A DNA stretch of 63,273 nt, counting the filler, from Salisapilia sapeloensis CBS 127946 (lineage: Eukaryota > Protista > Oomycota): the NCBI GenBank assembly GCA_023334545.1. It is 7 parts of 7 records of this genome, joined end to end, with 100 filler letters (N's around TTAATTAATTAA, not from the genome) between each part and the next. Parts side by side here need not be neighbours in the genome. Positions count along the whole stretch, not along the records: positions 57,650 to 61,226 come from JAADVB010000739.1; 6 more parts are not named here. One strand, written 5' to 3'. Shown in pieces: positions 4,733 through 61,226 of this stretch; the stretch's first letter is position 1, and the number at the start of each line of letters is the position of its first letter. The translations under genes were made by a program, and so were the position numbers. The notes beneath the pieces are model-generated. The model searched no databases and was not told where the DNA came from. It was given only the letters and a program-made list of their open reading frames with translations.

Positions 4733-4787
4733 AGCTACATAACAATATACTCGACTGCATAGATGTAGCAAGATCTATTGATTTTTA

Positions 4788-5239: not shown

Positions 5240-5401
5240 CCTTGACTGTTCCTTTGTTTGGTTCTTTTAATTGTGGCGATCTACTCGAGAAGATCGTACT
5301 ACTCTCTGTGATTGACTATCTGTAATATAAGACAAAATTTTGTTCCACTGGAAACTTGAGGATTTCATTCTGACTTCAAACAAACTACCACGAGCTATAG
5401 A

Positions 5402-6679: not shown

Positions 6680-6882
6680 CGCTTCTTACAAAGATGTGCA
6701 AGAACGCAGTCGGCCAAGTGACCACGTCACCTGGTTGTCATGACCATATACTTGTATACAAGATTAAAAAAACATATAGACAAGTTAATGTATACGTCGA
6801 CAGACTGGGCACATTTATAATTAGAATTATTCTATATAAAAGTTTCAATTAGATCATTTTCTAATTATCTTCCGTGATAGCG

Positions 6883-8151: not shown

Positions 8152-8284
8152 GCGCATTCATCCCGACACTCTTTCTTTTTAAATTTCAATATAACAAGAC
8201 GCTTTCAAGGCTATAACGTATCTTGGGATGTGGCGAGACGAATCGACGGACTGGTTGACGAGTCCCTTCATATTAAATTTGGAA

Positions 8285-9382
8285 ATGGGGAATCAACTTG
8301 GTAGCCAGCCGCTTCCTTTCGAGTATGGAAGACGACCGACGGACAGTGAACTGCTTTTACTCCATGGACTACAGAAACAACTCTTTACTCGACTTGTGCA
8401 ATCACCAACGGTATGTATCTTATCCTACAGTCTTGGAATGTCTGGCTTAAGCTACTCGATGTAGCACATTGGCTTGTTGGAACGATACTGGCAAGCCATG
8501 GTGGTGGATGTGTTTCAGCGCCAACACCCGAGTTGTGAATTGCCGACATTCGTGCTGTCAAGTCCGCTGTGGCGAACGTATGGCGGCTTTACGACCGACA
8601 GACCTTCCTACGATCTACGTCTAACGGGTGAGCTAGGACTGCGCTGCATCGTGCACTTTGTGGAACAGTTTCCAGGAGAAAGTTTATTGATGAAACGAAA
8701 ACGAGGTGGGTATCCATTTGTTCACGGTGCCATGGCAGTGGCAAGAGTGATGGCGGAAGCGCTATGTTTGGTGGACTCGGACGGCCAACCCGGCGCTTTT
8801 GGTGCGACCGAGACTGTGTATTGGCATCTCGTACGAGCAGACCAGGACATCTTTCTACAGCTATTCGCAGTCGCATTCATGCTCTTTGAACGAGAGTACT
8901 GTGCTCAAATGTCGAAAGAGCATGTAGATACGTCGTGCTCGAAAGAGCGAGTACGATTGCTCGCAGGCAATGTCAAGGTGCAAATGGTAGCTGCGTTGGA
9001 GCAATGTCCACGCCAGATCGATGATCTACACTCCGTGTGTTCCAATGCGAAGCATGCGCTGGAAATACTTGGGTCCATGGAATTCGAAACGAACCAGGCT
9101 TCGCATGGAAAGATCTCTGGTCGGAGTAACTGGCACAAGAAGTCGGATGCGACTAGTCAGAAAGAACGAGTCGCGAAGCGACTGTTTCCACGTAGTCCCG
9201 AAGTCGTTACGGGCGAAGTAGAAGCAGGTCGCAGTCCATATGCGTTCTGGTCCAACCATTCATCCAGCCATGATATCTTTGAAGACGCAATTGATATCTT
9301 TGAAGGATTGGAAGTGAAGAAATATTTGACGAGCAATGTAAAGGAAGGACAGGAGGAAGTCGGAATGAACTTGGATATGTAA
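8285..9382 (+). CDS. ELMO/CED-12 domain-like protein; join(8285..8410,8465..9382)
   Basis: W..YGGFTTDRPSYDLRLTGELGL resembles the ELMO core W..LGFQG.DP.TDFRG.G.LGL. A 54-nt GT-AG intron joins an MGNQLGS start in frame. Confidence 0.62.
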
Positions 9383-9447
9383 TCAGAAGCCGTTCTCAGA
9401 TAGTTTGGAAGTGTTTGGACAGTTTCACATAAGAATTAGCGGCTAGA

Positions 9448-9772
9448 ATGACAGACTGCATCGATTGCAAGGCAGGCGACCCGACGTATCACAAGAGCGC
9501 GGTGGAAAACACTGGGTGCGAAGGGTCGTATGAACGTGTCGACGGTAGGCAGCATAGAGCGCTATTATATCTACTCGTGGGTACTCACGGTCTTCTGCAG
9601 AGTGTATGAAGCAGCATAACGGGCGCGTCTCTGCCTGCAAAGAAGTACCTACGCCATTCGAAATTGCGTCTCGATCTCATATGCTAACGACTTCAACTAG
9701 GTCTGGGCCCACTTCCGTCAGTGCCACGAGCAGAACAAGAACGCACAGAAAGCGCAGAAGCAAAGCAAATAG
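9448..9772 (+). CDS. Small twin-CX9C (CHCH, COA4-like) mitochondrial intermembrane-space protein; join(9448..9544,9601..9644,9701..9772), 70 aa
   Basis: Two 56-nt GT-AG introns (the second with a CTAAC branch site) give MTDCIDCKAGDPTYHKSAVENTG-CEGSYERVDEC-MKQHNGRVSA-CKEVWAHFRQC-HEQNK. Not in the ORF track. Confidence 0.82.
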
Positions 9773-10064
9773 ACAAATCATGTGAGCATTACCACGATCC
9801 CGTCTACCTTAAATTTTCAATCGGCCCGCCTTTAGCCTGATTTTATATGGCTTCTTTGCGTCATCTAGAAATCACATCTGTCCAATCACGTGCGTTGTTT
9901 CTAAATTCAACGACCATACAAATGTCTGCGTATCGTCCACAAGCTTCGGAAGCCCACTACGGAATCGGCACGAGAGGAAGCAAGGCGATTCACACTCACC
10001 TTTGTGCCTTCGCAACTACAGATTTTCCCTACAGGACGCAACGTCATTGCATGCATTGATAGAG

Positions 10065-10328
10065 ATGCTTTATGGCTACGGCAGGCCGAACGCCTTTGGG
10101 CATGACCTTGATGAACATGAAACGATGCTGCTCGCATGCACGATTTTCGTCGTGTCCGTGCTTATCGTACTTGTCTACAAGTCCGCTCGCGGGTGGGACG
10201 ACGTGGACTTTTGCAGCAAACCTCGACTTTTATCTAAATTCAGACGACGACGTTCGAGTCGACTCCAGAGCCTGGACACGATTCTCGAAGACGAAGTCTT
10301 TATCGCCGTCGACCTGAAGCAATTATAG
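10065..10328 (+). CDS. Small single-pass membrane protein of unknown function
   Basis: ATG 10065 in ORF 10002..10328. One hydrophobic span MLLACTIFVVSVLIVLVY, followed by a basic cluster and LDTILE. Resembles oomycete hypothetical proteins I have seen. Confidence 0.5.
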   Translation: MLYGYGRPNAFGHDLDEHETMLLACTIFVVSVLIVLVYKSARGWDDVDFCSKPRLLSKFRRRRSSRLQSLDTILEDEVFIAVDLKQL

Positions 10329-10685
10329 CATGCGAACGCTACGGATGGCATCCAAGGAAGATGCACGCATTGACAAGACGATTTTTATGGAGTAGTTTAA
10401 CCACATGAATGTAGACTATACACAATTTCCAATCCTAGTGCTCTTCATACGTTTATGGTTGCCACGCCTCTTCCTTAACTCGGAAACGTTCCTTGGAATC
10501 GCATGTGCAGGATCCGTCAGGCTGATTCCCACCCAACCTGGCGCAAGCGTCGATATCCAGGCCACCTTTCCATACACTTTCACTGACTTTTTCAATACAA
10601 TTTCTCATTGGTCAAAATAACGCTTTTCAACCAATCGCCTCCATCCGATGCCATCCTAACAGCTCATTTGTACTCTGTACGCGAG

Positions 10686-11645
10686 ATGGACGAGTGGGTC
10701 GACAGCGAGTTGGAGAGCGAGGACTCTCCACGCTCACGAGACTTCTCCACCGACATGTTCGCCAATACGCCAAATAATAAATCATACCAGAAAGTGAACG
10801 GAAATGCGTTCTCTGCGTCCGACGATGGCGTGGCAAATCTACCTATGCCGACGCTTTCGTCCTACCGCGACATCCCAGTGTGCATGGTGCCGCAGCGAGT
10901 GAGTGGTCGTGCGAAAGAATCCAAGCAGCTGATCACGCGTGATATTCAAGCCCAATCATTGTCTCAAGTCTCGATGGCGTGCAACGCTGTCGTTGTTCGC
11001 GGCGCCTCTGGCAGCTATTACGTCTATCATTTCGAAATCACGAGCGACTTTTACAAGCAAAAGTGGGTCGTATGCAAGCGCTATTCAGAGCTGTATCGTC
11101 TACGAAAGCTATTGCTCACTCGCTTATCCCGGCATAAGAATCCACAGACACTTCGCAAGTGTTCATGCTGCTGCGATATTGGGAAGAAGCTCAAACGCAC
11201 TTCGTTTCCCAAACGCTTTGCACCTTTTGAAGACGCCACCGCTCTTGTTCAGAAGAGGACGTCTGGCCTCGAAGGTTTCATCTCGAGTGCATGCCAGTTT
11301 CTCGCTGCTGATCCGGAACAAGGTGAATTCGACGGTATGGCAGTCGTTTGTCGAGAAGTCCAGGCGTTGCGACAAAAAGTAAAAGAGTTTCTCCAGTTCC
11401 CACTCGACCATGAAGCCCAGCACATTCGATCGATATGGCAGCTAAAGTACGTGGACGCTCGAGACGTCCAGCTAGATACAGACTCGTGCCCCATTTGCCT
11501 ATGCGAATGGGTGGAACTAGATGGGAATCGACTCGTCCTATCTCCCTGTGGCCACTTTTTCCATGAACACTGCATCAATGAATGGTACCGCACTCGCTTC
11601 GACTGTCCTATGTGTCGAACGATAGCTGGTGAACCATTCGCTTAA
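10686..11645 (+). CDS. PX-domain plus RING-H2 putative E3 ligase
   Basis: PX-like YVYHFEI...WVVCKRYSELYRLR...FPKR...KRTSGLEGFI. C-terminal CPICLCEW...PCGHFFHEHCINEW...CPMCR is a RING-H2 finger. Start codon uncertain. Confidence 0.8.
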   Translation: MDEWVDSELESEDSPRSRDFSTDMFANTPNNKSYQKVNGNAFSASDDGVANLPMPTLSSYRDIPVCMVPQRVSGRAKESKQLITRDIQAQSLSQVSMACNAVVVRGASGSYYVYHFEITSDFYKQKWVVCKRYSELYRLRKLLLTRLSRHKNPQTLRKCSCCCDIGKKLKRTSFPKRFAPFEDATALVQKRTSGLEGFISSACQFLAADPEQGEFDGMAVVCREVQALRQKVKEFLQFPLDHEAQHIRSIWQLKYVDARDVQLDTDSCPICLCEWVELDGNRLVLSPCGHFFHEHCINEWYRTRFDCPMCRTIAGEPFA

Positions 11646-11688
11646 ATACGTTTAAATCTTGCAACAAGAGTGTCTTTGTCTTTTATTC

Positions 11689-14600
11689 CTATTCTCTTCC
11701 TAGTCGAGACAAGTGGAAACCAGCTTGTTCGAACTCGTCTTCTCCACCTTGCTTGCCTATGATCGCACACTTGGCTTGCTTGACGCTGTCGTCGTTAAAG
11801 TGTTTCTGAGCAACGTCCATAAGGCTCTGTCTCGTCACTGACAAATACTGTTCACGACGCTTTTGACGCATGTCGTTCGAGATACCTCGCATGAACGACG
11901 TCTTGCCCTTGCTCGAAGGCGTCTGAGGCGCGTCGACACTGGCAAAGACGGACAGTTGGGCTTCCGATACGTCGCGATCGGAGAACCCGCCGTCTCGCGC
12001 CCAGTTCAACGCTCGTTCATAAGCCTTAATAGTCGCCCACGTCTGCGGGTCATAGTGAGACGCAAAGGAGAAGGCTCCTTCGCCCATACCAGCCATGGAT
12101 CCGTACGCACCACCAGTCTCCCGAACGTCTTGATGGACGACACAAGAGGACATGAGCTGGGCCAGGACGGTCAATGGAACGTGGTCGTCATGTGCGAACG
12201 AGACACTCGGTAGCGCTTGAGCGACAAAGTTAACGGAAATAGGGAAACCAAAGTACGCGTTCGTCGGTGCATCCCTCAAATCCGTGAGCAAAGACGACAC
12301 GAACGGATCGACAGACGTGTCCAAGGACGGCGCATCCGATTGCTGATACAATGGACGCAAGAGCTGCGAATCTAGTGCTGCCTCCACTTGCGTCTGCTGT
12401 GTCGATTCCGCAACAACAGAGATACGCAAATGCTGTGGGCTGAAGACAACCTTGGACAGTTTCTCCAGCACAAGAGCGAGGTCACGTAGCTCGGCATCTG
12501 ATGCACGCGCCCACTGCTGCAACAATTGAACGTGCGTGAGTCCGCCGTACACTTCCTGGTATGGCGCAGACGCAGTGAGACCTAGACGAGCCCTGCGTCC
12601 AGCCAACGGAGCGCCAGAGGAAGAGATGGAGTTGGCTGCATTTGCCGCACTGCTCTGTAGAAGGATACGCAACTGCGCGAGGTTCCTATCGTCCGTGAAC
12701 TGCGTGTCGGTCAGCACTTGCGTGAGTAGCTGAAGGTTGTCATCGAGTTTGTGCGGTAGGCACATACTCGAGACGAGAAGCTGCTGCTGACTATGGTTCG
12801 CAGCGTCTGATAAGTCCGGATGCGCCTGCGGAGCAAAGGAGATGCCGCCACTGCAGTTCTGAACAGCCGTCTGCAGCGCATCGTGCGATAGACTGGAGGT
12901 GCCTAGCGCACCGACGACAGAGGCGAGGAGAGGCAGGTAGGCATGGTACTCGAATGGGATGTTGGCGTCCTGGATATCAAAGAGAAGACGTAGGTAGCAC
13001 ACTTCGTTTGTCGTGGGCACCTGCACAAACTCGACTGGTGTCTCCTTTTCGCCTACTCTAGTATACACAATATCATCTAGATTCTCCTTGTGGACCGTCG
13101 GAATGTCTTGGACGTTCAAAGTAGGTAGACACTCAACTGGTTGCTCTGCCTTTTGATACGTCTCGAGTTCATTACTTTCCTTTTGGATGCGTAAAACGTC
13201 TTCTTCCGAAAGAGAAGCATGTAGTTGTTGTAACTCTTCCTTCTCCTTGTCTTCTAGAGACTGGACGTAGGAAGCGTTAGGCTCCATGAACAAACGGACG
13301 CTCTTGGTGTCGTTCGATAGGAGGTAGGTGCTGATGTAACTTTCTAAGAATCGGGGATCTTGCTTCATCTTTGAGCGTAATTCGGACAAGACCGGATTCA
13401 CCTGCAAGTTAGAGGCAACGTCACCGTCATGAGCCCAGATGGAGCTGACCCCATGCATCAGATTGAGACCAAAGTTGCTTGAAATGTGCTTGATACTGAG
13501 TTCCAGCTGGTGTAACAACGCGTCTACACGTTCCGAGTCAAAGCCATTTGCTACGACTTGGTGTAACGTCGTCTCAATGGCCTTTTCAATGTCGTCTACA
13601 GACGCTTGACCGTTCGATAGACCTTCCAACGCGATACCGAAGGAAGTGTAATACGTAGACGTGTCAAAGCCAGTGCCGACAGCAAAGTCTTGCGCCAGTC
13701 CAGTGTCAATAAGTGCCTTGTACAGCTCCGACGACGGGCCGTTGGTCAGAAGGTAGCCAACAACACGCAGCACGAACGTGTTGAAAGCGTCTGTAGACGG
13801 AACAGGAAGTAGTTTCGTCGTTGCGAACTTAGTATTGTCTCCACCTTCGCCCATATTGGCCGTCGGACCCTGCATGACAATCATCTCCGGCTTCTTTCCA
13901 TCCGATTTAATGGAAAAGTCGTCCGTGGATACTCGAATGGCTTCCGACGGAGCGTTGTATTCGAATCGAGACAAGACCTTCTCGTCCAAATACTGCAGGT
14001 GATCCGTTAGCGGCAGATCTCCGTAGGTGTAGAACATAGAGTTCGTCGGGTGGTAGTGCTGGGCGTGGAAGTCTGTCAATTGCTCGTACGTGAGAGATGG
14101 GATGACACTTGGGTCACCACCACTAACGTTGCCATAGATACTTCCTTTCAACAGCTCTTGCTGCAACCTCGTGGCGAAGAGATTGTCACTGTCGGACATG
14201 ACGCCCTTCATTTCATTCAACACGACACCTTTACGCACGAGTTCCTTTGATTCAGAGTCGATCTCTAGACGGTGGCCTTCTTGTAGAAAGTCAAGGCGAT
14301 GGAGGTGAGGGAAGAAGGCTGCATCACAGTAGACGGACAGGAGATTCTTCCAGTCCTCTGCGTTCGTCGTCGCGAACGGGTACATGGTGTGGTCGTATGC
14401 CGTCATGGCGTTCATGAATGTATTCAAGGATCGCTTCAGCATGTTGAAAAACGGATCGCGGACCGGATACTGCTGCGAGCCACACAGAACCGTGTGCTCG
14501 AGAATATGCGGCACTCCGTTCGAGTTGTACGGTGGCGTCTTGAACATGACGCTAAAGACGTTGTTTGCATCTGCAGCATCAATATGGAGATACCTGGCTT

Positions 14601-14835
14601 TGGTTCGATCATGAACTAGTTCCAACGCTTCGACATTGTACTCTGGCACGGGTGTCCGTTGTACGAGGCGAAAGTTGTGATACGTCTCGCCAATCTGCAG
14701 TTTACTGCAGCCTTCTCCACGTTGTAGCTCCGTAGAAGAGGCCGTAGAGCTCGAGGCGGTGGTAAAGGTCCGCGAGACGTACGTCGGACGATGCACGGCG
14801 GCCCGACGTCCGGCTAGAGACCACTGTCGGATCAT
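11689..14835 (-). CDS. PreP: Mitochondrial presequence protease (M16C metallopeptidase)
   Basis: 1048 aa with inverted zinc motif GVPHILEHTVLCGS, RDPFFNMLKRSLNTFMNAMT and VRETGGAYG. The Arg/Ser/Thr-rich N-terminus resembles a mitochondrial targeting peptide. Confidence 0.93.
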   Translation of the reverse strand: MIRQWSLAGRRAAVHRPTYVSRTFTTASSSTASSTELQRGEGCSKLQIGETYHNFRLVQRTPVPEYNVEALELVHDRTKARYLHIDAADANNVFSVMFKTPPYNSNGVPHILEHTVLCGSQQYPVRDPFFNMLKRSLNTFMNAMTAYDHTMYPFATTNAEDWKNLLSVYCDAAFFPHLHRLDFLQEGHRLEIDSESKELVRKGVVLNEMKGVMSDSDNLFATRLQQELLKGSIYGNVSGGDPSVIPSLTYEQLTDFHAQHYHPTNSMFYTYGDLPLTDHLQYLDEKVLSRFEYNAPSEAIRVSTDDFSIKSDGKKPEMIVMQGPTANMGEGGDNTKFATTKLLPVPSTDAFNTFVLRVVGYLLTNGPSSELYKALIDTGLAQDFAVGTGFDTSTYYTSFGIALEGLSNGQASVDDIEKAIETTLHQVVANGFDSERVDALLHQLELSIKHISSNFGLNLMHGVSSIWAHDGDVASNLQVNPVLSELRSKMKQDPRFLESYISTYLLSNDTKSVRLFMEPNASYVQSLEDKEKEELQQLHASLSEEDVLRIQKESNELETYQKAEQPVECLPTLNVQDIPTVHKENLDDIVYTRVGEKETPVEFVQVPTTNEVCYLRLLFDIQDANIPFEYHAYLPLLASVVGALGTSSLSHDALQTAVQNCSGGISFAPQAHPDLSDAANHSQQQLLVSSMCLPHKLDDNLQLLTQVLTDTQFTDDRNLAQLRILLQSSAANAANSISSSGAPLAGRRARLGLTASAPYQEVYGGLTHVQLLQQWARASDAELRDLALVLEKLSKVVFSPQHLRISVVAESTQQTQVEAALDSQLLRPLYQQSDAPSLDTSVDPFVSSLLTDLRDAPTNAYFGFPISVNFVAQALPSVSFAHDDHVPLTVLAQLMSSCVVHQDVRETGGAYGSMAGMGEGAFSFASHYDPQTWATIKAYERALNWARDGGFSDRDVSEAQLSVFASVDAPQTPSSKGKTSFMRGISNDMRQKRREQYLSVTRQSLMDVAQKHFNDDSVKQAKCAIIGKQGGEDEFEQAGFHLSRLGRE

Positions 14836-15718
14836 AGTTTTCTTTTCTTTTGTGTTTGCTGGTCAACGATCTGAAGGAGGTTGGCCAATGAGAAAGAAGG
14901 TCGGACATTTAGTGAAGTGGGAATAAAAGTTCAATATAAAGTGGTTTTAAGCTAGCGCACGGAGGATGGATTGAAAAGTTACATGATCGCTTTGTATCGA
15001 TGTTAAATGCTTTTCGCAATTTATTGGTGCAATGGCGGCTTCTCATAGTTTGCCTTGTCGCCATTTTGGTTTTAAATGTCAGCAAAATATCTTTGAGAAT
15101 CTGCTCTATAGAATAGAGCTCGATATTGAATCCTCATACTCATTCGTGTAGCTTATGGATGTAGTAACGCGATGTTATTTAGCTTGATACAAGCAGTTGT
15201 GGCTAGAAGGAAGTCACTAATATAAGTAGACCGTGAGATTGCCCTTTAGGTTACCGTCGATAACGACTGAAAAGTATACTGTCTATAACAGCGATAGCAG
15301 GATTGATGGCGATCTTCTAGTGTGTTTTAAGCTTCCTTGTCGTCTATATTGGTCCCTACGATTGTATGAATGTTCTTCGGTTCTTTTCCACAAATTGCGG
15401 CTTATGTGCTGTAAGTGGTAACTTCGGGCGAACTTGTAAATATTGGCACATTGGCAAATATCTAAGTACGAGGTGGCACATGGAACACGAAAACATATCA
15501 ATAATAAGTTGCTGTTGCCCAGCTTGCCCTAGTGCTACTAAATTCGGGCTCATGTGAACCGGTAAGTGCGATGCTTTCAGATAGATCCGATGACGTCATT
15601 ATACATTCACTCGCGAAGAATGCATGTTTCCACCGTCTGAAGCCATTCGTTGTCAAATAAAGCTTTCGACTACCAAACCTGACGTTTGGCTCGCGACTAA
15701 ATAATAGCAATAGAAGTC

Positions 15719-16252
15719 ATGCCAACGCCTGGTGATAGAGAAAACATTCTCATTCGAGAGTACCGAAGTGCGGACGAAACGCAGGTTGTAGCATTATTCA
15801 AATGTTCACAACAAGACCAGATTAACAAGGCTGATGCACCATTCAAACCGGAGATGACGTCTTACCTGGAGATGTGTATGCGAACTGACTTGGCGGACTT
15901 GGAGGGTACCTACTTGACTCCTGGCGGCAACTTTTGGGTTGCCGTTGATGGAGAGGAAATTGTCGGTATCGTTGGTGCGGAGAAAAAATCGGACGATTTA
16001 ATCGAGTTGAGGCGAATGGCGGTGGTTGCTTCCTATCGCCGTTTTGGACTTGGTCGACGACTAGTTAATCGACTAGAAACGTGGAGTCAAGAAAATGGTT
16101 TTCAACAGATCAGGCTGTATACTTTGGACATCATGAAGCATGCGATGGCTTTCTACGAATCGATGGGATATACATTGATGGAGGAGCGTGAAGTATTTGT
16201 GAAAGATCCTTGCACGTCCATCATTTCGTATACAAAGAAGCTAGATGGTTAA
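15719..16252 (+). CDS. GNAT-family N-acetyltransferase (NAT8/camello-like)
   Basis: 177 aa. GGNFWVA, then ELRRMAVVASYRRFGLGRRLV (acetyl-CoA motif A), then AMAFYESMGY. Confidence 0.88.
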   Translation: MPTPGDRENILIREYRSADETQVVALFKCSQQDQINKADAPFKPEMTSYLEMCMRTDLADLEGTYLTPGGNFWVAVDGEEIVGIVGAEKKSDDLIELRRMAVVASYRRFGLGRRLVNRLETWSQENGFQQIRLYTLDIMKHAMAFYESMGYTLMEEREVFVKDPCTSIISYTKKLDG

Positions 16253-17241
16253 AATGATAGAAAACTTTGTCGAATAGCTTTTTAATTTTATTACTTATCC
16301 TCATTGTAGAGGTCTATGCCCGGTTAAGCGTACCAGAGGTGGGCTCCTAAGGATGTCGTATTTTAAAATAATCTAACACACTTCTCATTCTTTGCAAAAA
16401 CAAGATAGTGGTCAATGCTCCTACCCCGATTTGTTTGCATAAAAGGAAACGGTAATCCTGGTCATGAAGATGCTGAAATCTGATTCGGTCATGGGAAATA
16501 ACTCAACAGTACTGAAAGTATGAAGCCGTAAAAATGATGCTTAGGTAGACAGTGTACTTCATTTGATATCAACGATCTCTTTGTTAATACCATCACATTG
16601 TATCAAAAACAGTTAGAGAGATAAATTTTACTGTCGTATAGGGAACGCTTCATGCTCATACATGTAGAACGTAAAGAGACTTTGTCTGTCAGCAACCGAT
16701 AGTGTAGTACAGTTTGTTTGACAGTATGTGCCAAGAGCTTTGTGCTCTTCTTGGCGTGTGCCAACATATTATTATTATCATAAGTATGTGGTATATTGCG
16801 TTATGTCTAGTAAAATCTAAGTAACGATCATTGTGATTTAGCACCTGGAAGGAGGTACACCTTGCCACACTGCAAGCAAAGAGGAATGCATCTAAGTTGC
16901 TTTTTAACGCGGCTAATATTCTTCCAGTAGGGCCGTTCAGAGTTCTTGCATCAAATGAATTTGTGAATGGGGTATATCAGAAGATAGATGATAATGCTGG
17001 AATTCGAGATATGAGGGATGGATCTGGAGATGCTGGAGAAGCCGCATGTCCAAAGGCTTCTCTGCTTGTTGATGTGGCCCTATGCAATAATGTATACGAA
17101 CGTCCTTGCTTACTTGCTTCCTTGTGACCTCATCCGTTCAGTTGATAGGACAACGTCAGCCATATTAATCGGATCTCTCTCTTCTTCTGGCTTGAGTATA
17201 TTCCGGAAAGCTCGTTGTAGCTTGTTCGCCACGCGATGCAA

Positions 17242-17794
17242 CTAAGCAAAGTCGATCAGCGCAAACACTTTGTCGTGTGGATAGACCGGCGTGTCACTCT
17301 TCGGGCAAGTGCACACGTATGGATAGGGAGCAGCCATCGGTCCTCCTCCTCGCAGCAACCCAATAGGAAACGCATGCGCTGTGCCCGCCGTCAAGTACTC
17401 AAAGACATCACTAAAGGTGAGGAAACTCTTTTTCAGCGACTTTGGGATACTGTAAGCATAAAGCAGCTCTTGCCATTCAAGATGCGTTGGATGAAGGGGT
17501 TGATAGACGGATTAAAGAAGCTCTGGATGAGTAAATCGTCTACTGCAAAGGACGGGAACAAGGCTCCTCGCATGAACCGTTCCTGGAAGAACGTCCCATC
17601 ATCCTGCTGAGATCCAGGCCAGAGATCCCCGAGACTCGGCAGCTCGTCATCGGCCGACACTTGACTTTGCTGCGCCTGTAGCAAGGCCGTGTGCTGCGAC
17701 AGCGTGTGCAAATTGCCCAAGAAGAAGGCTTTCAGCTGGACACCAAAGTTCCTCCAGACACGTCGCTGGTACTGGAACCAAGTCACTTTTCTCC
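17242..17794 (-). CDS. C-terminal fragment of a BK/Slo-like (RCK-domain) cation channel, with an apparent frameshift near 17454; 5' part lost in the gap
   Basis: ERFMRGALFPSFAVDDLLIQSFFNP continues in another frame as IPKSLKKSFLTFSDVFEYL...FPIGLLRG...YVCTCPKSDTPVYPHDKVFAL*. This matches the RCK2 tail pattern of Slo channels. Confidence 0.6.
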
Positions 17795-17894
17795 NNNNNN
17801 NNNNNNNNNNNNNNNNNNNNNNNNNNNNNNNNNNNNNNTTAATTAATTAANNNNNNNNNNNNNNNNNNNNNNNNNNNNNNNNNNNNNNNNNNNN
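17795..17894. other. Assembly spacer (44 N + TTAATTAATTAA + 44 N)
   Basis: Seen directly. The 12-mer carries stop codons in all six frames. Confidence 0.97.
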
Positions 17895-17896
17895 CA

Positions 17897-18037
17897 TGCC
17901 CCAAATTCGTTCGATCGTTGGCAGAGAAGTGTCTTTCGAATAACCCGGACGATCGCCCGACTGCCGTCAATATCCAGTACTACTTCCACGAATTGATGAA
18001 GCATGGGTCATCTCAGGACGATGCTACCTTTGAATAA
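17897..18037 (+). CDS. 3' end of a protein kinase gene (subdomain XI, TKL-like); the rest is lost in the gap
   Basis: Open frame from the gap edge: CPKFVRSLAEKCLSNNPDDRPTAVNIQYYF...*. Matches CP..L...CL..DP..RPTA. Confidence 0.75.
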   Translation, partial: CPKFVRSLAEKCLSNNPDDRPTAVNIQYYFHELMKHGSSQDDATFE

Positions 18038-18157
18038 AAGTTCATTCAACATGTAGATAAGACATACGACTCTTCTCATTTATTTTATTGAAAAGTCCGG
18101 TTATGCCCTATTGCTGCAGTGGACAAAAGGATCAAGTGGAGAATGGAACTCATTCTT

Positions 18158-18949
18158 CTACTCACTTGGAGGGTACACTTCTTCGATCTCATTAAACTTG
18201 GCGTAGAATCGTTTATCACGGAACACATTAAGCACTTTTCCGGCATTTGTAGTGTCCTTAAGACTTTCCATCATTGCTTCTCCAAGTGTCTCCGGTGCCA
18301 CTATGCCACCGTATGCATCGGATAGCCCAGGCACAGCATCTAGCGTTGGCTTTGTCATCGGAGTTTCAACAATGCCTGGAGCAACAGCTGTGACTCGAAC
18401 GTTTTGCTTGCCCTTTAGGAAGGCCATCGCTCGGGTAGCTTGAGCTACGCCAGCTTTGGCCGCAGCATAGTCTGGGTTTCCACCAGAGTTATAGACTCCA
18501 AAGATACTCGAAATATTGACGATCACACCTTCTTCACCTTCAGGTAGCTCCTTGAATTTGTGGATTGCCACCTGAGTACCACGTAGCACACTGGTAAGGT
18601 TGATTTCAATGACGCTTTTGTGCACTTGGTTCAGGTTGTCCGCGTGGAAATCCTGCGCTGGACCAATGCCGGCATTATTGATGAGGACGTTTGCCGGACG
18701 AGCAAAATGTGACTTGGATGCCTCAAAGACGCGGTCCCAATCTTCACTCACTGTTACATTTTGTTGGGCGGCGGTCACACGATCTTGGCCGTATGTAGAT
18801 TGTAGCTCCTCAAGAGTTTTATCGAGCAGATTCTTGTTAATATCAGTCAGCACGACGCGGCCACCGGCAGTAAGGATGTACTCGGCATACTTGCGACCGA
18901 GTCCTCCAGCAGAACCGGTGACAATGGCGACAATGTTGGTAGGCTCCAT
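18158..18949 (-). CDS. Short-chain dehydrogenase/reductase (15-PGDH-like), paralog A
   Basis: AIVTGSAGGLG, LINNAGI, VNISS, catalytic YAAAK, VAPGIVET. Likely ATG at 18949. Confidence 0.9.
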   Translation of the reverse strand: MEPTNIVAIVTGSAGGLGRKYAEYILTAGGRVVLTDINKNLLDKTLEELQSTYGQDRVTAAQQNVTVSEDWDRVFEASKSHFARPANVLINNAGIGPAQDFHADNLNQVHKSVIEINLTSVLRGTQVAIHKFKELPEGEEGVIVNISSIFGVYNSGGNPDYAAAKAGVAQATRAMAFLKGKQNVRVTAVAPGIVETPMTKPTLDAVPGLSDAYGGIVAPETLGEAMMESLKDTTNAGKVLNVFRDKRFYAKFNEIEEVYPPSE

Positions 18950-18978
18950 AGTGGTATGGTCTTTGATGGTTCCAGCGC

Positions 18979-18992
18979 GAATTTGAAAATGC
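18979..18992 (-). promoter_or_regulatory. Oomycete INR+FPR core promoter element (first base deviates)
   Basis: Minus-strand GCATTTTCAAATTC fits CATTYBNNNWTTY, about 30 nt upstream of the SDR ATG. Confidence 0.55.
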
Positions 18993-20485
18993 GGTACGAA
19001 CTGAGCAAAAATTGACACACGATCTGATCACATTGAAGAGGATCCGTTTACGACTCGTCGATGCATCTCATGAAGGCACGGCAATGATAATGTTGCATAT
19101 GGCAGTGTATAGTATCTGCTCAACGCTGGACTGTGCAGAAAGTACAATTTAAAGACTGTAATGTATTTGAGCAAGGTCAAGAAGAACGACTTTGGGAGTG
19201 CTTGAGTAGATAGTAGCATCTAAATAAATATAAACTTTCTGTATGCACCTCTTCTGTCGAGCGCTGGCTTTTGTATTTGCATGCATCTCTCTGTATCCTG
19301 AATACGCTTGTCGGGATTCATCTGTTCTCTTCGTATTCAGTATTGTGCCATATACCGATGCTAGAAATGGACGCAACTTTCGCGCTGGATCCGTGGTGTG
19401 GATGAGCAAGGTGCTATAAACTACATCAGTGTTTAAAACAAATCATATATAAGATGCTAGTGAACTGGAAGGTGGACTGACCGTTCTTTGACTTCCTTTT
19501 CGACTTCAGTTGCCCATGAGGCTACATGTTGGTAGGCGAGTACCCAGTAGGTCATCGACTCGAACGAAAAGCTGGATACTGACGTCGATGATCGTATTGT
19601 TGTAGTTGAAAGGAGTAGCTCTGAGAGCTTTTCTTGAAGGTAGGAAGGTAGTAAAAGGTGTGCATATCTAGCAACTTTTCATGTGAGACGGCAGAATAAG
19701 TAACTGCCAAAACGTAAAACATCTTCCGTTATATATATCATATCCGCTAGTACTGCAGCTATCTTTTCTTTACACTCATCCACCCCATGTAGACATTCAT
19801 ACTTTTTCTTCAGTCCTAGAGCTTTAGCGATATTTCACGATAAGCTTAGGCGAATAGTGCATTTCCTCGTGGCTCTTCTGCGGTGCGTGCCTAGCTGCCA
19901 CGTAGTCGAGTTGGGGTATTCTGTTTGTTTTATGCTCTATACAAGCATTCTTCGTCGTGGTGTCAGTATCCGGTAACGGCAGTAAATGTTACTCGCTTAG
20001 TTCGTTCATCCTATCGATAAATGCACTGTGGTATCTCTGCAACCTCACTTATATTAACACGGACAGTACGGTAGATTGACATGAGTGGTTCATCATGTGT
20101 CTATCGTTATTTACAGTATCGACCTACTTAAACGGACTTCTATTTATGTGCCTGTGGAATAGTGCAGTACACGGAAAACGAGAAACTATTAATGCAAAAA
20201 CAGGTGGCGATATGTGTGTACTAGCTGTGATATTGACACGATAACGAGCAGATCCGTTACTGGAGTATCCTGTATCTCAGCCCTAAGCCATTTCGTCCAT
20301 GCATTGTGGCATCGAACACATCTCACCGCATAAATAGTACTCAAAAGCCTCTACTACCCATCGTTGTGTGGTTGAAGGCCTAACGTGTCATCAAGGGAGA
20401 CAATTAAATGGTGGCATAGGCCCATCCTGCTCATTCGCCAATATCTCAGCAAACCCCCAAAGCACGTACAAATCATTTGAACAAG

Positions 20486-57649: not shown

Positions 57650-57712
57650 CAACTTGTTCTGGTTTCATATATACCTCGGATTCACCAGGACGAACTTTGT
57701 GTCAGTGACAGC

Positions 57713-58978
57713 TTAGTGGCTCTCCGTGGCGTGCTCCTTCTGGTTGTCCTCCGCCTTGCTGCCGCTCGTCCACTGCGTCACCTTGTCCATCATCTTGCTG
57801 ATCGTCGACTCCTGGTTCTGGCCGTCCTCTTCCTTCTGGTTGTCCTCCTTTTCCTTTTCCTTTTCCTTCAGCTCTTTTTCCTTTTCTTTCTCCTTTTCCT
57901 TTTCCTTCTTCTCCTTCTCCTTCTTGTCCTCCTTGTCCTCCTTCGAGTGCATCTTTTCCTTCACCTTGTCCATCTTCGACTCGCCCTCTCCTTCCTCGTC
58001 GCTCGAAGAAGAGCTGGAGGATGACGAAGACGAATTGGAATTAGAACGCTGCATGCGGTGCTTCAGCGCGTGCGCCTTCTTGCGGAGCATGCCGCCCGTG
58101 TCCTCCGCGTGCTGACGAAGGTTGCCTGGCGGCGGGTCCTCGCCCTCAAAGTCGGCACCAGCGTCCATCATGGCACGAAGGATCGCGTCCTGCGTGGCGC
58201 GATCCTCGCCGTCCATCAAGTGCTCTTCACCACCGTCCTTGGTGTCCACCAGCAAGATGCCGTGCTCAAACTTCTTGTCATCGCGAGACACCTTGGCACC
58301 CTTGCCGCTCATCTCGGCAGCAGGACTGTGCGCAATATCCGACGTGAACAGCCAGATACGGTCGGCCTTCTTGTCCACCACCAAGTACTGCTTCTTGCCG
58401 TGGTTCGACGTCAGCTTCGCCATGAAACCCTCGTGCACCTTCACCTGTTTGGCGAACGACGCATTGTTCAGCGCCGTCCACACGTTCACAGGCGCATCCT
58501 CCGGCAGGAGACGCTTGTCCACCGGCACGAGGAGCTCCACTTCCATCACGGTCGGCGAGATCGGGTCCGCCATCTTGCTCTCCTTGGATGGAGCCAACAC
58601 ACCCAACAGCACCACCGCCTGGGCTACTTCCTTGGCATATCGGCGTGACACCGAGTCTTCCACGTCACCCGTCTTGCCCTCCGACGTCGCGCCTTCTTCG
58701 TGCTGCTCCGAGGCGGCCACCTGGCCTTCCTGCTGCACGTGGGCAGTGTTCTGCGGCGTGCCATGCTCGCCGTGCCAGGTCTCGACGGCCTTCACGAGCT
58801 CGCTGCCGCGCACGCCCGTGGTCTTCTTCACCAGCATCTTGTGGTGCGTCGTCATGATCTTGTCCGAGTTCGACAAGAAGTAGTCGGCAAAGCTGCGCGC
58901 GTCCTGCTGGACGTTGACCGAGAGCTCGTCGAAGCGCATGCGGCGTTCGATGACGGTTCCCTCAAACTGTTTCACCAT
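57713..58978 (-). CDS. DEP-like/PH-like protein with a Ser-rich and Lys/Glu-rich, dehydrin-like C-terminal tail
   Basis: 421-aa intronless ORF with strong G/C third positions. GVRGSELV is DEP-like; VHEGFMAKL..GKKQYLVVD...IWLF is PH-like. Tail: RSNSNSSSSSSSSSSSDEEGEGESKMDKVKEKMH plus a KE repeat. Domain calls are tentative. Confidence 0.75.
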   Translation of the reverse strand: MVKQFEGTVIERRMRFDELSVNVQQDARSFADYFLSNSDKIMTTHHKMLVKKTTGVRGSELVKAVETWHGEHGTPQNTAHVQQEGQVAASEQHEEGATSEGKTGDVEDSVSRRYAKEVAQAVVLLGVLAPSKESKMADPISPTVMEVELLVPVDKRLLPEDAPVNVWTALNNASFAKQVKVHEGFMAKLTSNHGKKQYLVVDKKADRIWLFTSDIAHSPAAEMSGKGAKVSRDDKKFEHGILLVDTKDGGEEHLMDGEDRATQDAILRAMMDAGADFEGEDPPPGNLRQHAEDTGGMLRKKAHALKHRMQRSNSNSSSSSSSSSSSDEEGEGESKMDKVKEKMHSKEDKEDKKEKEKKEKEKEKEKEKELKEKEKEKEDNQKEEDGQNQESTISKMMDKVTQWTSGSKAEDNQKEHATESH

Positions 58979-59028
58979 GCTCGTTCTTGTCTCTTGTCTC
59001 TCTCTGTGTTGCTTGCGTTCTTCGTAGC

Positions 59029-59042
59029 AAATTGCGGAATGA
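59029..59042 (-). promoter_or_regulatory. Oomycete INR+FPR core promoter
   Basis: Minus-strand TCATTCCGCAATTT is an exact match, 50 nt upstream of ATG 58978. Confidence 0.75.
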
Positions 59043-59755
59043 AAGGAAACCTGACTTTGGATTCCTTCAAGTTCGCATGCGGTCGATTAAAGCGAGACAG
59101 CCATGGATCCATGACTCGTCTCTTTTTTCTGGCGCGCAAAAATTTGGATCGGAACGTCGTTGGAAGGAGAAAATGATTCATGGGCATAGCTCGGCATATT
59201 CGAGGCGTACGCTCGGTGGTGGAGTGGGTGCGTGGGAAGAAGCGACTTGGCCGTCGGAACGACTGCGGCAACGGATCTTTGCGGTCAGGGAATGGGGCCA
59301 AGTGGCTGAATGCGGATAGGTATCGTCTCAGACGGTGCACCTTACAAGATTGACTTGGGCGGCCACGTCCATGCACTTCAGGTTTGATCGCCGGTAGTCT
59401 CGCGACTTGGTGGATAGGTGGACTGGAGCGCCCGCGCATGATTTCTTGAAGCGATCTTGCCGACATTCCTACTGTTAGTAGGTACGCTTGACCAATGAAT
59501 GTGAGCCAGGCTCACGTTCCGACGTCGCTTGCATGCCAAGTTACCGCCGACGTCCTCTCGAACATCGAGCAGCAGACACTCGGTTCTCCCGACGATTGAA
59601 AGTCAGCTCACACGAGACGATAGATGGATTCAATGCCGATGATGACTCATGCCAAATTTGGAAGCCCATGATTATTGCACCAAAGTAGAGTATCTACAGA
59701 ATTCGTCTGCACAGCTGGTCCTGGCGTCGCAGCCTCCGACGATCGCTCGTACACT

Positions 59756-59769
59756 TCATTTCTCCATTT
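59756..59769 (+). promoter_or_regulatory. Oomycete INR+FPR core promoter
   Basis: TCATTTCTCCATTT is an exact match, just upstream of ATG 59786. Confidence 0.72.
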
Positions 59770-59785
59770 TCCATCGAAAGAAACC

Positions 59786-60112
59786 ATGGACGGAGCCTTT
59801 GCGAACGTGCGGAAAACGGCCAAAGAAAAAGCACAGCGCGTGCAGGCCAAAGTCGCGCCCAACACGGTGGGCAAGAACAGCACCGCCAAGCTGTCGAACG
59901 GCGAGCGAGTTAAGGCGAAGATGGCGGAGCTGCGCGAAAAGGTCCAGCCGTCCGCCAAAGAGAACCCTCCGTCCTCTCTGCAGGCTAAGCGCAAGGCGGA
60001 GGAAGCGGAGAGGGGTGCTGCCAAGGATCTCGAGCGGGAGGGCAAGTTGAAACGGTCGGGCTCGAGCAGCAGCAGCAGCGGCCGAATTGGGTCATCTTCC
60101 GACGAAGAGTAG
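59786..60112 (+). CDS. Small basic hydrophilin-like protein (108 aa) ending in an S-segment-like motif
   Basis: ATG 59786 follows an INR+FPR element. K/A/E-rich, no Cys or Trp; ends KLKRSGSSSSSSGRIGSSSDEE*. Confidence 0.68.
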   Translation: MDGAFANVRKTAKEKAQRVQAKVAPNTVGKNSTAKLSNGERVKAKMAELREKVQPSAKENPPSSLQAKRKAEEAERGAAKDLEREGKLKRSGSSSSSSGRIGSSSDEE

Positions 60113-60579
60113 TTGAGAAGTAGTGTGCTTGCCGACTTTAGGTTGAAGAATACAATTTCTATTATATGAATAAATCATGGTGCGTTCTGCTTTGGTGTCC
60201 ACGATCTGTCTAACACGCATCCGAGCGTACTTTGTCTCGAGTACCATTACTGAAGACTATCCAGCAGAACTGGAAACTACATCGACATGGTGAGCACCCG
60301 CTGTCCAACGCAATACCTTCCGATGTCCAACGCTTCTAGCATCGTGCATTGCCAACAGCACAGATAAGAAAAAGGAGGCGTTTCGCATATCGAAAAAACC
60401 CCGCGAACAGCTTCCTCACCCAACTTCCACCTGGAAATGGCTACATTTTCCAACTTCAAATCAAACTATCCGAAAATTCAGGAGATAAATTTCGTTTCAA
60501 GCAGGCCAGTGCGACGGGATCCGAGACAAGTGTAGGCTCAAATGGCTGCAGAGTTGCGGACTGCGGTGCCTGAGCTACT

Positions 60580-60593
60580 CCATTTCCGAATTT
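60580..60593 (+). promoter_or_regulatory. Oomycete INR+FPR core promoter
   Basis: CCATTTCCGAATTT is an exact match, 42 nt upstream of ATG 60636, followed by an AC-rich leader. Confidence 0.75.
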
Positions 60594-60635
60594 GCCAAGC
60601 AACGAAACAACCAACAACCAACAACCAGCATATCG

Positions 60636-60998
60636 ATGCCGATCGCCGCCAAAGCCAAGCTCGAGGCCGCCAAGGTCAAGCACGCCCTCACGCCGGGCCA
60701 CCACACCGCTCCTGCCCACGGACACCACACCACTGCCGCACACCATAGTCCTGGTCACCACGGACACGGTATCGGCCACGGCCACGGCCACACTTCGCCG
60801 ACCCACGGTATGCACGCCAAGCCATCCATGACGGACAGAATGAAGGCCGCAGTGACACCGGGGCACAAGAAGAAACCAGCAACGACGGGCGAGAAAGTGG
60901 AGGCGAAAGCCAAGGGCTTTAAGCACATGGTAGACCCAACGACCCACACCCATGAGGAGAAGCCCAAACACAAACACAAGCATAAGCACCACATCTAG
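60636..60998 (+). CDS. Small His-rich hydrophilin/dehydrin-like protein (120 aa)
   Basis: 25 His counted in 120 aa; Gly/Lys/Thr-rich, no Cys or Trp. INR+FPR upstream; GC-rich third positions. Confidence 0.75.
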   Translation: MPIAAKAKLEAAKVKHALTPGHHTAPAHGHHTTAAHHSPGHHGHGIGHGHGHTSPTHGMHAKPSMTDRMKAAVTPGHKKKPATTGEKVEAKAKGFKHMVDPTTHTHEEKPKHKHKHKHHI

Positions 60999-61226
60999 AG
61001 TGTTTCTCTCTGACGTGAAGTCCCTGCGCCAGCGGTGCCATGCTTCCATTTATCTAGCTATATTATTCTTTCAATAAAAGGCTTTACAAAAATTTTCTTT
61101 CGATCGTTTTGTTATCTTGATTATGCATACGAGAGGAGATACCTGACGCTGGGTATGTAGGCGAGTGTATTGGACGAGTCAGTGGAGAGTGTGTTGGAGT
61201 AGAGGCGAGATTGGATAGTATGCCTA

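What the first reader, a model, noticed from the sequence alone, without database searches (positions are those of the whole stretch)
57713..60998. Three-gene cluster of dehydrin-like hydrophilic proteins: candidate oomycete desiccation/cold-stress locus
Seen: three adjacent intronless genes on one contig, each with an exact INR+FPR promoter and GC-rich third positions. Gene 1 has RSNSNSSSSSSSSSSSDEEGEGE followed by SKMDKVKEKMH. Gene 2 has KAKMAELREKVQP and ends KLKRSGSSSSSSGRIGSSSDEE. Gene 3 is 21% His and contains SMTDRMKAAVTPGH. Established: plant SK-type dehydrins carry an S-segment (LHRSxSSSSSSS(D/E)EE, a CK2 target), a K-segment (EKKGIMDKIKEKLPG) and often His-rich stretches. Inference: a co-regulated dehydrin-like module for spore or cyst survival, probably convergent. 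I am not aware of such a module being described in oomycetes.
Basis: partly seen in the sequence, partly recalled or inferred. Interest (0 to 1): 0.8.

Follow-up and report, generated by a model that had tools for sequence, protein, structure and literature searches.

The report
Dehydrin-like motifs in three oomycete genes
Three neighbouring, transcribed oomycete genes carry short motifs that resemble plant dehydrin segments, but one is a folded membrane-binding (PH-domain) protein with a charged tail and the other two are small orphan disordered proteins, so this is a motif-level look-alike and not a demonstrated stress-protection gene cluster.

Summary
The sequence facts are all confirmed. 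There are three adjacent intronless genes, G1, G2 and G3. Each has one exact INR+FPR core promoter match, third-position GC (GC3) of 0.75-0.83 and RNA contigs, and the quoted peptide strings are present.

G1 (421 aa) is not a dehydrin-like hydrophilic protein. Its first ~280 aa form a DEP-like plus PH-domain module shared with 45 oomycete-type relatives, 11 of which are fused to glutathione peroxidase. Only its lineage-specific 136-aa tail looks dehydrin-like. The tail has an 11-Ser run with an RSNSN lead and a DEEGEGE end, then MDKVKEKMH, then an E/K-rich helix.

G2 (108 aa) ends in LKRSGSSSSSS...SSSDEE, a close match to the plant extended S-segment. G3 (120 aa) is 21% His. Both meet the hydrophilin criteria and may be weak tandem paralogs (p about 0.005).

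The proposed K-segments of G2 and G3 score no better than shuffles (p 0.29-0.73). No gene hits Pfam Dehydrin, and G2 and G3 have no detectable homologs.

Assembler depth differs about 100-fold between the genes. INR+FPR is a general core promoter, so co-regulation is unsupported.

Best reading: these are convergent multisite phospho-serine/acidic clusters on otherwise unrelated charged proteins. A stress role is untested.

The parts
57713..58978 (-). G1 coding sequence, 421 aa, intronless, very high assembler depth in RNA runs
   Evidence: ORF. RNA contigs cover 57650-58984 with no joints. A 97%-identical transcript in organism B has 23 synonymous and 10 non-synonymous differences.
58589..58924 (-). 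G1 aa 19-130: DEP-like helical/winged N-terminal domain (a lead, not proven)
   Evidence: Foldseek aligns pleckstrin and pleckstrin-2 DEP plus C-terminal PH to aa 19-274. Atlas feature hits to pleckstrin score 0.82. pLDDT is above 90 over most of it.
58151..58468 (-). G1 aa 171-276: PH-domain fold
   Evidence: VIA-align Z 12.5-11 to many PH domains. Foldseek probability 1.0, TM by target 0.7-0.8.
57716..58123 (-). G1 aa 286-421: lineage-specific charged low-complexity tail (K 20%, E 18%, S 14%, GRAVY -2.1)
   Evidence: None of the 45 relatives has a tail with a Ser run longer than 3.
57980..58066 (-). G1 aa 305-333: S-segment-like cluster, LKHRMQ-RSNSN-S11-DEEGEGE; mixed Ser codons
   Evidence: Conserved in the 97% relative apart from one S-to-G change.
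57947..57979 (-). G1 aa 334-344: K-segment-like SKMDKVKEKMH
   Evidence: Score 36 against HKEGIVDKIKDKIHG, p=0.00045. p=0.003-0.005 against canonical K-segments.
57845..57943 (-). G1 aa 346-378: E/K-rich repeat, predicted as a long single helix
   Evidence: Model helix 349-404 with pLDDT 76-89 over aa 351-380. DNA repeat family D1.
57779..57799 (-). G1 aa 394-400: second SKMMDKV copy
   Evidence: DNA repeat D15, 16 of 17 nt identical to the first copy. Highest hydrophobic moment in the tail.
59027..59042 (-). INR+FPR core promoter of G1
59756..59771 (+). INR+FPR core promoter of G2
59786..60112 (+). G2 coding sequence, 108 aa, hydrophilin-type orphan, low assembler depth
   Evidence: No homolog or family found. 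AATAAA at 60169 lies near the contig ends.
60044..60109 (+). G2 aa 87-108: C-terminal S-segment-like KLKRSG-S6-GRIG-SSS-DEE
59837..59953 (+). G2 aa 18-56: core weakly similar to G3 aa 68-102
   Evidence: BLASTP E=0.006. Smith-Waterman p=0.005 against shuffles.
60580..60595 (+). INR+FPR core promoter of G3
60636..60998 (+). G3 coding sequence, 120 aa, 20.8% His, hydrophilin-type orphan
   Evidence: No homolog or family found. AATAAA at 61073.
60681..60815 (+). G3 aa 16-60: His/Gly-rich block with HGHGIGHGHGH and two of the protein's three PGH motifs (the third is at aa 75-77, 60858-60866)
   Evidence: Three PGH in the whole protein has P=8e-4 against shuffles.

Best explanation
Three separately transcribed, intronless oomycete genes lie side by side.

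G1 is a cytosolic two-domain protein: a DEP-like domain followed by a PH domain. The same module is fused to glutathione peroxidase in many oomycete relatives. In G1 it is followed instead by a lineage-specific, highly charged tail. The tail runs, in order: a basic helix; a Ser run led by a hydrophobic-x-Arg-x-x-Ser context and ended by an acidic patch; a short amphipathic Lys-rich motif; and an E/K-rich single helix.

G2 and G3 are small, lineage-restricted, intrinsically disordered hydrophilin-type proteins, possibly diverged tandem paralogs. G2 ends in the same kind of Ser/acidic cluster. G3 is a His-rich probable metal binder.

Shown: gene structures, transcription, folds, motif statistics and the absence of family membership.

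Inferred: the Ser/acidic clusters are multisite phosphorylation switches. An acidophilic CK2-type kinase would work back from the acidic end, and a basophilic CaMK/SNF1-type kinase would act at the Arg-x-x-Ser start. This would add a large negative charge that could bind Ca2+, or change how the adjacent basic and Lys-rich segments and the PH module meet membranes.

The likeness to plant dehydrins is convergence on short linear motifs, not homology. No stress role or co-regulation is shown.
For: - Gene models, INR+FPR and GC3.
- Separate RNA contigs without joints.
- PH fold.
- Two-domain module shared with Pythium, Globisporangium and Albugo-type proteins.
- Glutathione peroxidase fusions in 11 of 45 relatives.
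- The tail is unique among relatives.
- Purifying selection on G1 including the tail motifs.
- Mixed Ser codons in G1, arguing against recent slippage.
- S-segment flank statistics.
- G1 K-like motif.
- Hydrophilin criteria (Gly >6%, hydrophilicity >1; PMC11277543) are met by G2 (7.4%, 1.15) and G3 (10%, 1.10).
- G2-G3 similarity.
- No Pfam Dehydrin hit.
- No homologs of G2 or G3.
- The kinase logic rests on established CK2 (S/T-x-x-D/E/pS) and CaMK/AMPK/CDPK (hydrophobic-x-basic-x-x-S) specificities, and on dehydrin S-segment phosphorylation and Ca2+ binding (PMC4215689).
Against: - No phosphorylation, localisation or stress data exist.
- Shuffle nulls assume independent residues and overstate significance. 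Ser runs followed by acidic residues are common CK2 clusters in eukaryotes.
- A real-protein background gave one other K-like hit in 36.7 kaa.
- The DEP assignment rests on weak alignments (TM 0.21-0.28).
- The G2 and G3 homolog searches were word-based and did not cover unannotated oomycete genomes.
- Most KS-type dehydrins escape PF00257 (PMC8669000), so the negative Pfam result is not decisive for G2 and G3.
Confidence: 0.55

Rival explanations
1. One reading: the three genes form a co-regulated dehydrin-like module that protects spores or cysts against desiccation or cold. The K- and S-like segments and the His-rich stretches would act as they do in plant SK/KS dehydrins: membrane and protein protection, metal binding, and CK2-regulated Ca2+ binding.
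For: - S-like clusters in two adjacent genes, and an S-then-K order in G1 as in SKn dehydrins.
- G2 and G3 meet the hydrophilin criteria.
- G3's His content exceeds that of AtHIRD11 (13.3%; PMC3617826).
- The nearest named Atlas clusters for G2 and G3 are Grg1, HSP12, LEA/KIN2 and Dehydrin, but only at 0.61-0.70.
- All three promoters carry INR+FPR.
- Relatives of G1 fuse the same module to a phospholipid-hydroperoxide-type peroxidase, which hints at a membrane-protection theme.
Against: - G2 and G3 have no K-segment, the defining dehydrin feature.
- No Pfam hit.
- G1 is 70% folded signalling-type domains.
- Assembler depth differs about 100-fold, and G2 moves opposite to G1 and G3 between the two samples.
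- INR+FPR does not imply shared regulation.
- Atlas scores in this range also occur for shuffled proteins.
Confidence: 0.15
2. The resemblance is a coincidence of low-complexity sequence. The genes are unrelated neighbours, and the Ser runs and K/E repeats are neutral or generic disordered linkers with no dehydrin-like or phospho-switch function.
For: - The only sub-threshold Pfam hit is the low-complexity SR-25 family.
- G2's Ser run is 5xAGC, which looks microsatellite-like.
- K-like motifs occur in unrelated positions of real proteins, for example P0024.
- The tails of G1's relatives vary freely.
- The finding was chosen after reading many windows, so there is a look-elsewhere effect.
Against: - Flanks specific to the extended S-segment are improbable by composition: 2e-5 and 4e-4, in two adjacent genes.
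- G1's Ser run uses five different codons and is kept under purifying selection.
- G1 has very high assembler depth in the RNA runs.
Confidence: 0.2
3. G1's tail, or G2/G3, derive from a plant dehydrin gene fragment acquired by horizontal transfer and later fused or diverged.
For: Only the motif order S - acidic - K-like - Lys-rich in G1, and the C-terminal S-segment plus small size of G2, which recall SKn and KnS dehydrins.
Against: - No significant sequence similarity to any dehydrin model.
- GC3 of the tail (0.83) equals that of the rest of the gene.
- Native oomycete promoters are present.
- The similarity is limited to about 35 low-complexity residues.
Confidence: 0.03

Closest known systems
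Plant dehydrins (LEA group 2, PF00257), SKn and KnS/HKS architectures such as AtHIRD11
   Same: - A Ser tract with an Arg-Ser lead and an acidic end (G1, G2).
- The order S, then acidic/Lys-rich, then K-like in G1.
- A hydrophobic-D-K-hydrophobic-K-E-K-hydrophobic-H core close to the AtHIRD11 K-segment.
- A C-terminal S-segment and a size of about 100 aa in G2.
- High His content in G3.
- Hydrophilin composition in G2 and G3.
   Different: - No HMM match.
- No K-segment in G2 or G3.
- G1's K-like motif lacks the Gly and Pro-Gly positions and sits on a folded DEP-like/PH protein.
- No Y-, F- or H-segments.
- The organism is not a plant.
- No evidence of stress induction.
Pleckstrin-type DEP + PH proteins, and the oomycete PH/glutathione-peroxidase fusion family (for example Pythium oligandrum TMW55450.1, Globisporangium K3WJ88/K3WJ90)
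   Same: - G1 aa 1-280 aligns with 45 relatives at E down to 6e-27.
- The PH fold scores Z 12.5.
- The whole module matches the K3WJ88 model at TM 0.53-0.57.
   Different: - Identity is 36% or less.
- G1 has no peroxidase domain and carries a unique Ser/Lys/Glu tail instead.
- Pfam PH and DEP models do not reach significance on G1 itself.
Hydrophilins and small fungal stress proteins (HSP12, Grg1), and fungal dehydrin-like DPR proteins (DprA/B, AbDhn1-3)
   Same: Small, Gly-containing, very hydrophilic, probably disordered cytosolic proteins in a filamentous microbe. They are a precedent for 'dehydrin-like' proteins outside plants that lack homology to dehydrins.
   Different: - G1-G3 have no DPR signature.
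- No sequence match.
- Atlas similarity is only 0.61-0.70.
- No expression or phenotype data.
ER/K single alpha-helix (SAH) segments and CK2 acidic Ser clusters of eukaryotic proteins
   Same: G1 aa 346-378 is an alternating E/K repeat predicted as one long helix. The Ser runs end in S-x-x-D/E contexts.
   Different: Neither feature was tested experimentally. Here they are combined with dehydrin-like flanks.

Membership tests
Dehydrin (LEA group 2) | At least one K-segment (EKKGIMDKIKEKLPG-like); required by definition (PMC5415607, PMC4215689) | tested here: not met
   G2 p=0.29/0.73 and G3 p=0.38/0.26 against shuffles. Only G1 has a partial match (MDKVKEKMH, p=0.0005-0.005), and a real-protein background gives a comparable hit. 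As a three-gene set the feature is not met. For G1 alone it is inconclusive.
Dehydrin (LEA group 2) | Match to the Pfam PF00257 profile | tested here: not met
   No Dehydrin hit at E<=10 for any of the three proteins. Caveat: most KS-type dehydrins are missed by PF00257.
Dehydrin (LEA group 2) | S-segment: LHR(S/T)G-S(4-10)-(D/E)n; optional in the family | tested here: met
   G2 has LKRSG-S6...SSSDEE. G1 has LKHRMQ-RSNSN-S11-DEEGEGE. The flanks are improbable by composition. Motif definition from PMC5415607.
Dehydrin (LEA group 2) | Whole protein hydrophilic and disordered | tested here: inconclusive
   Compositionally met for G2 and G3 (GRAVY -1.15 and -1.10). Not met for G1, whose aa 1-285 are folded with pLDDT above 90 and GRAVY -0.53.
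KS/HKS-type dehydrin (AtHIRD11 group) | N-terminal H-segment, K-segment, poly-Lys segment and C-terminal S-segment in one protein of about 100 aa | tested here: not met
   G2 has only the C-terminal S-like segment. G3 has only the His richness. Neither matches the AtHIRD11 K-segment. The H-segment was not modelled, because no profile was available.
Hydrophilins | Gly >6% and hydrophilicity index >1 (PMC11277543) | tested here: met
   G2: 7.4% Gly, 1.15. G3: 10.0% Gly, 1.10. G1 as a whole: 6.4%, 1.05, reached only because of its tail.
Hydrophilins | Induction under water deficit | not testable with these tools
   The RNA runs are coded and carry no condition labels.
PH-domain superfamily | Seven-strand beta sandwich capped by a C-terminal helix | tested here: met
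   G1 aa 171-276: Z 12.5-11, rmsd 1.7-2.6 A. Foldseek probability 1.0.
Pleckstrin-like DEP + PH architecture | DEP winged-helix domain N-terminal to the PH domain | tested here: inconclusive
   Pleckstrin DEP plus C-terminal PH aligns to aa 19-274 but with TM 0.21-0.28. Atlas score 0.82. No Pfam DEP hit.
Fungal dehydrin-like (DPR) proteins | Repeated DPR signature motif (PMC3788798, PMC3103405) | tested here: not met
   No DPR tripeptide occurs in G1, G2 or G3, read directly from the translations.

The most novel reading that the evidence does not exclude
G1 is a membrane-targeted dehydrin analogue. An oomycete DEP-like/PH module, which in relatives delivers a phospholipid-hydroperoxide-type glutathione peroxidase, here delivers a convergently evolved S-K-polyLys/Glu tail. 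That tail protects membranes or buffers Ca2+ when phosphorylated. The adjacent hydrophilin pair G2/G3 (one phospho-regulated, one metal-binding) belongs to the same protective system. This would be the first SK-dehydrin-like module outside plants.
Probability: 0.12. Interest if true: 0.65.

Novelty: new variant of a known kind. Interest (0 to 1): 0.35.

Why it matters
If the Ser/acidic clusters and the K-like motif work as they do in plant dehydrins, this locus would show independent evolution of dehydrin-type short linear motifs in a stramenopile. It would also point to a membrane-protection theme for an oomycete-specific DEP-like/PH module that is otherwise fused to glutathione peroxidase. 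As it stands, the result is mainly a corrected annotation: one abundantly transcribed PH-domain protein with an unusual tail, plus two orphan hydrophilins. It is also a caution that low-complexity motif matches need real-protein backgrounds.

Tried and rejected
- A word-index homolog search with whole G1 returned nothing, because low-complexity words crowded the candidates. The exhaustive search with aa 1-300 worked.
- Exact look-ups of G1, G2 and G3 found nothing on record.
- Word-index searches for G2 and G3 found no homologs.
- The single-sequence structure model of G1 was poor, pLDDT 45. It was replaced by the alignment-based model.
- The metagenome scan for close G1 relatives found none.
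- The Pythium oligandrum locus of the best relative shows tandem peroxidase fusions but no G2- or G3-like neighbours, so it gives no synteny evidence.
- The PDB sequence search with the family profile hit only the peroxidase part. With the tail alone it hit nothing meaningful.
- Rfam on the piece gave no match.
- A literature search for an exact Ser/acidic string found no paper.
- Searches for dehydrin or LEA proteins in oomycetes found only plant-side work and one annotated LEA protein in a P. cactorum proteome table.
- I did not compare against a full-length plant dehydrin. None was available by reference, and typing one was not appropriate.
Full report
**What is in the sequence.** The piece 57650-61226 holds three open reading frames with strong coding signatures:
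- G1: 57713-58978, minus strand, 421 aa.
- G2: 59786-60112, plus strand, 108 aa.
- G3: 60636-60998, plus strand, 120 aa.

Third-position GC is 0.83, 0.77 and 0.75, against 0.43-0.52 in the spacers. The 16-nt pattern YCATTYYNNMATTTKC occurs exactly three times. Each copy lies in the sense orientation 15-64 nt upstream of one ATG, with none expected in shuffles. This is the oomycete INR+FPR supramotif of Roy et al. (PMC3599244).

**Transcription.** Four RNA-type runs of the same organism hold 66-78% of the sampled words. Two of them were laid on the piece. Each gene is covered by its own contig with no joints, so the genes are intronless as read. A stretch at 60175-60480 is silent, which argues against DNA carry-over. 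G2 and G3 contigs end near AATAAA at 60169 and 61073.

Assembler word depth in the two runs is:

| Gene | Run X2 | Run X3 |
|---|---|---|
| G1 | 2970 | 6858 |
| G2 | 47 | 10 |
| G3 | 184 | 544 |

This is a poor measure of expression, but it gives no hint of equal or parallel expression. G2 falls between the runs while G1 and G3 rise.

Runs of a second organism (B) hold a 97%-identical G1 transcript. Applying its 38 differences gives 23 synonymous and 10 non-synonymous changes. The Ser run is kept apart from one S-to-G change, and SKMDKVKEKMH is kept unchanged. One of those runs also holds 13% of the words of the G2-G3 stretch. I could not lay it a second time.

**G1 is mostly a folded protein.** An exhaustive HMMER search with aa 1-300 found 45 relatives, with E down to 6e-27 and at most 36% identity. 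Named ones come from Pythium oligandrum, Globisporangium polare and G. ultimum.

A model built on 25 sequences has pLDDT above 90 over most of aa 10-70, 110-130 and 150-280. Residues 171-276 are a PH domain: VIA-align Z 12.5, rmsd about 2 A, and Foldseek probability 1.0. Pleckstrin's DEP plus C-terminal PH aligns to aa 19-274, and Atlas features point the same way. These values are weak, so I call the N-terminal domain DEP-like only as a lead.

The whole two-domain module matches a Globisporangium 'PH domain-containing protein' model at TM 0.53-0.57. It also matches a 'Glutathione peroxidase' entry over 282 residues at 4.4 A. Eleven of the 45 relatives carry a GSHPx domain after the module. 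In P. oligandrum three such genes lie in a cluster, two of them directly in tandem.

No relative has a Ser run longer than 3, and none has a tail of G1's composition. The part of G1 that looks dehydrin-like is therefore a lineage-specific 136-aa appendix.

**Anatomy of the G1 tail:**
- Basic helix, aa 295-311.
- LKHRMQ-RSNSN-S11-DEEGEGE, aa 305-333.
- SKMDKVKEKMH, aa 334-344.
- An alternating E/K repeat, aa 346-378, modelled as one long helix with pLDDT 76-89 over aa 351-380. This is typical of ER/K single alpha-helices (my own knowledge).
- A second SKMMDKV at aa 394-400, whose DNA is 16 of 17 nt identical to the first copy.

The eleven-Ser run and the two Ser codons just before it (13 Ser codons in all, aa 312-326) use five different codons. 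That argues against recent slippage and for selection on the peptide.

**Testing the dehydrin motifs.** The Pfam Dehydrin model gives no hit at E<=10 for any of the three proteins. Most KS-type dehydrins are known to escape that model (PMC8669000), so I added motif tests. These used K-segments printed in the literature: the canonical one and two Vitis variants (PMC5415607), and the AtHIRD11 K-segment (PMC3617826).

- **G1, K-segment:** the best ungapped BLOSUM62 match in the tail scores 35-36. Against 5,000-20,000 shuffles of the same sequence, p is 0.003-0.005 for the canonical forms and 0.00045 for AtHIRD11. The class pattern hydrophobic-[DE]-K-hydrophobic-K-[DE]-K-hydrophobic arises in 8e-5 of shuffled tails.
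- **G2 and G3, K-segment:**
- **Real-protein background:** among 114 oomycete proteins and ORFs (36.7 kaa), one sequence, P0024, holds IVEKIKEKV and scores 33. The K-like motif taken alone is therefore not rare enough to carry weight.
- **S-segment:** this evidence is stronger. I held the Ser run fixed and shuffled the rest. L-[HKR]-R-[ST]-G directly upstream, as in G2, arises with P=2e-5. R-[ST]-x-[ST]-x, as in G1, arises with P=4e-4. An acidic triplet after the run has P=0.02 in each. G2's LKRSGSSSSSS differs from the plant extended S-segment LHRSGSSSSSS (Leu 90%, His 74%, Arg 94%, Ser/Thr 97%) by one conservative residue.
- **Limits of these tests:** the nulls assume independent residues, and Ser runs ending in acidic residues are generic CK2 clusters. 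The numbers show non-randomness, not homology.

**G2 and G3.** Neither has a Pfam family, a homolog in the word-indexed 5.8-billion-cluster collection, or an exact record. Both meet the hydrophilin criteria of Gly above 6% and hydrophilicity index above 1 (PMC11277543): 7.4%/1.15 for G2 and 10.0%/1.10 for G3. Neither has a hydrophobic N-terminus, so both are probably not secreted (read directly from the sequences).

The two share a 35-39-residue core, R-hydrophobic-x-A-x-V-x-P ... GE+V+AK ... V-x-P. BLASTP gives E=0.006 and Smith-Waterman gives p=0.005 against shuffles. This is compatible with old tandem duplication but does not prove it.

G3 holds three PGH motifs (P=8e-4), an HGHGIGHGHGH block and a KHKHKHKHH end. 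By analogy with His-rich dehydrins such as AtHIRD11, which bind Cu and other metals through His, metal binding is the most likely property. The nearest named Atlas clusters are Grg1, HSP12, LEA/KIN2 and Dehydrin, but at 0.61-0.70. Shuffled proteins also reach that range, so these are leads only.

**How it most likely works.** Shown: structure, transcription, motif non-randomness and non-membership. The rest is inferred.

Both Ser clusters begin in a hydrophobic-x-Arg-x-x-Ser context (M-Q-R-S-N-S in G1, L-K-R-S-G-S in G2) and end in S-x-x-D/E. By the established specificities of CaMK/SNF1/CDPK-type and CK2 kinases, this predicts priming at both ends and processive phosphorylation of the run. 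In plant dehydrins, S-segment phosphorylation gives Ca2+ binding and relocalisation (PMC4215689).

In G1 such a switch sits between a basic helix and a Lys-rich amphipathic motif, next to a PH domain. It could therefore tune membrane contact or partner binding. I give this reading 0.55.

**Promoters and co-regulation.** INR+FPR is present in only 8-15% of oomycete genes, so three in a row is mildly unusual. It is a core-promoter element associated with high and developmentally variable mRNA levels. In P. infestans, 54% of INR+FPR genes go down from hyphae to sporangia. It therefore does not support a shared spore-survival programme.

**Novelty and verdict.** I found no paper describing dehydrin-like proteins of oomycetes. 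Fungal dehydrin-like DPR proteins are the nearest precedent, and their signature is absent here.

The finding is best filed as a new variant of known kinds: a PH-domain family member with an unusual S/K/E tail, and two orphan hydrophilins. It is not a dehydrin family member. Interest is moderate to low until orthologs, expression and phosphorylation are examined.

Noticed in passing
L001:3625-13425 (Pythium oligandrum SPLM01000147.1), and proteins P0001, P0009, P0011, P0017: The DEP-like/PH module of G1 is fused to a glutathione peroxidase domain in 11 of 45 relatives. In P. oligandrum three GSHPx genes lie in one cluster, two of them directly in tandem. This looks like an oomycete-specific membrane-targeted peroxidase family.
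   Followed up: partly
P0024 aa ~79-93: A metagenomic relative of G1 carries a K-segment-like KPVGIVEKIKEKVDP in the linker of the N-terminal domain, at a different place from G1's motif.
   Followed up: no
window 59144-59785: Low-depth RNA contigs (depth 5-47) run across the G1-G2 divergent spacer, well upstream of the G2 INR+FPR. This could be a longer G2 5' leader, an upstream start, or an unannotated transcript. The strand is unknown.
   Followed up: no
window 57837-57934: The E/K-coding repeat breaks Logan contigs in every run. This may be why the full G1 product is not on record in the protein collection.
   Followed up: partly
window 57657-59017, and part of 59700-61092: RNA runs labelled as a different organism (B, 2025) contain a 97%-identical G1 transcript at depth 46-185, and about 13% of the words of the G2-G3 stretch. 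This suggests a close relative living in or with that organism.
   Followed up: partly
window 57713-58978: G1 has very high assembler depth (about 3000-8000) in both RNA runs laid, far above its neighbours. It may be one of the abundant transcripts of this organism, but depth was not normalised.
   Followed up: no
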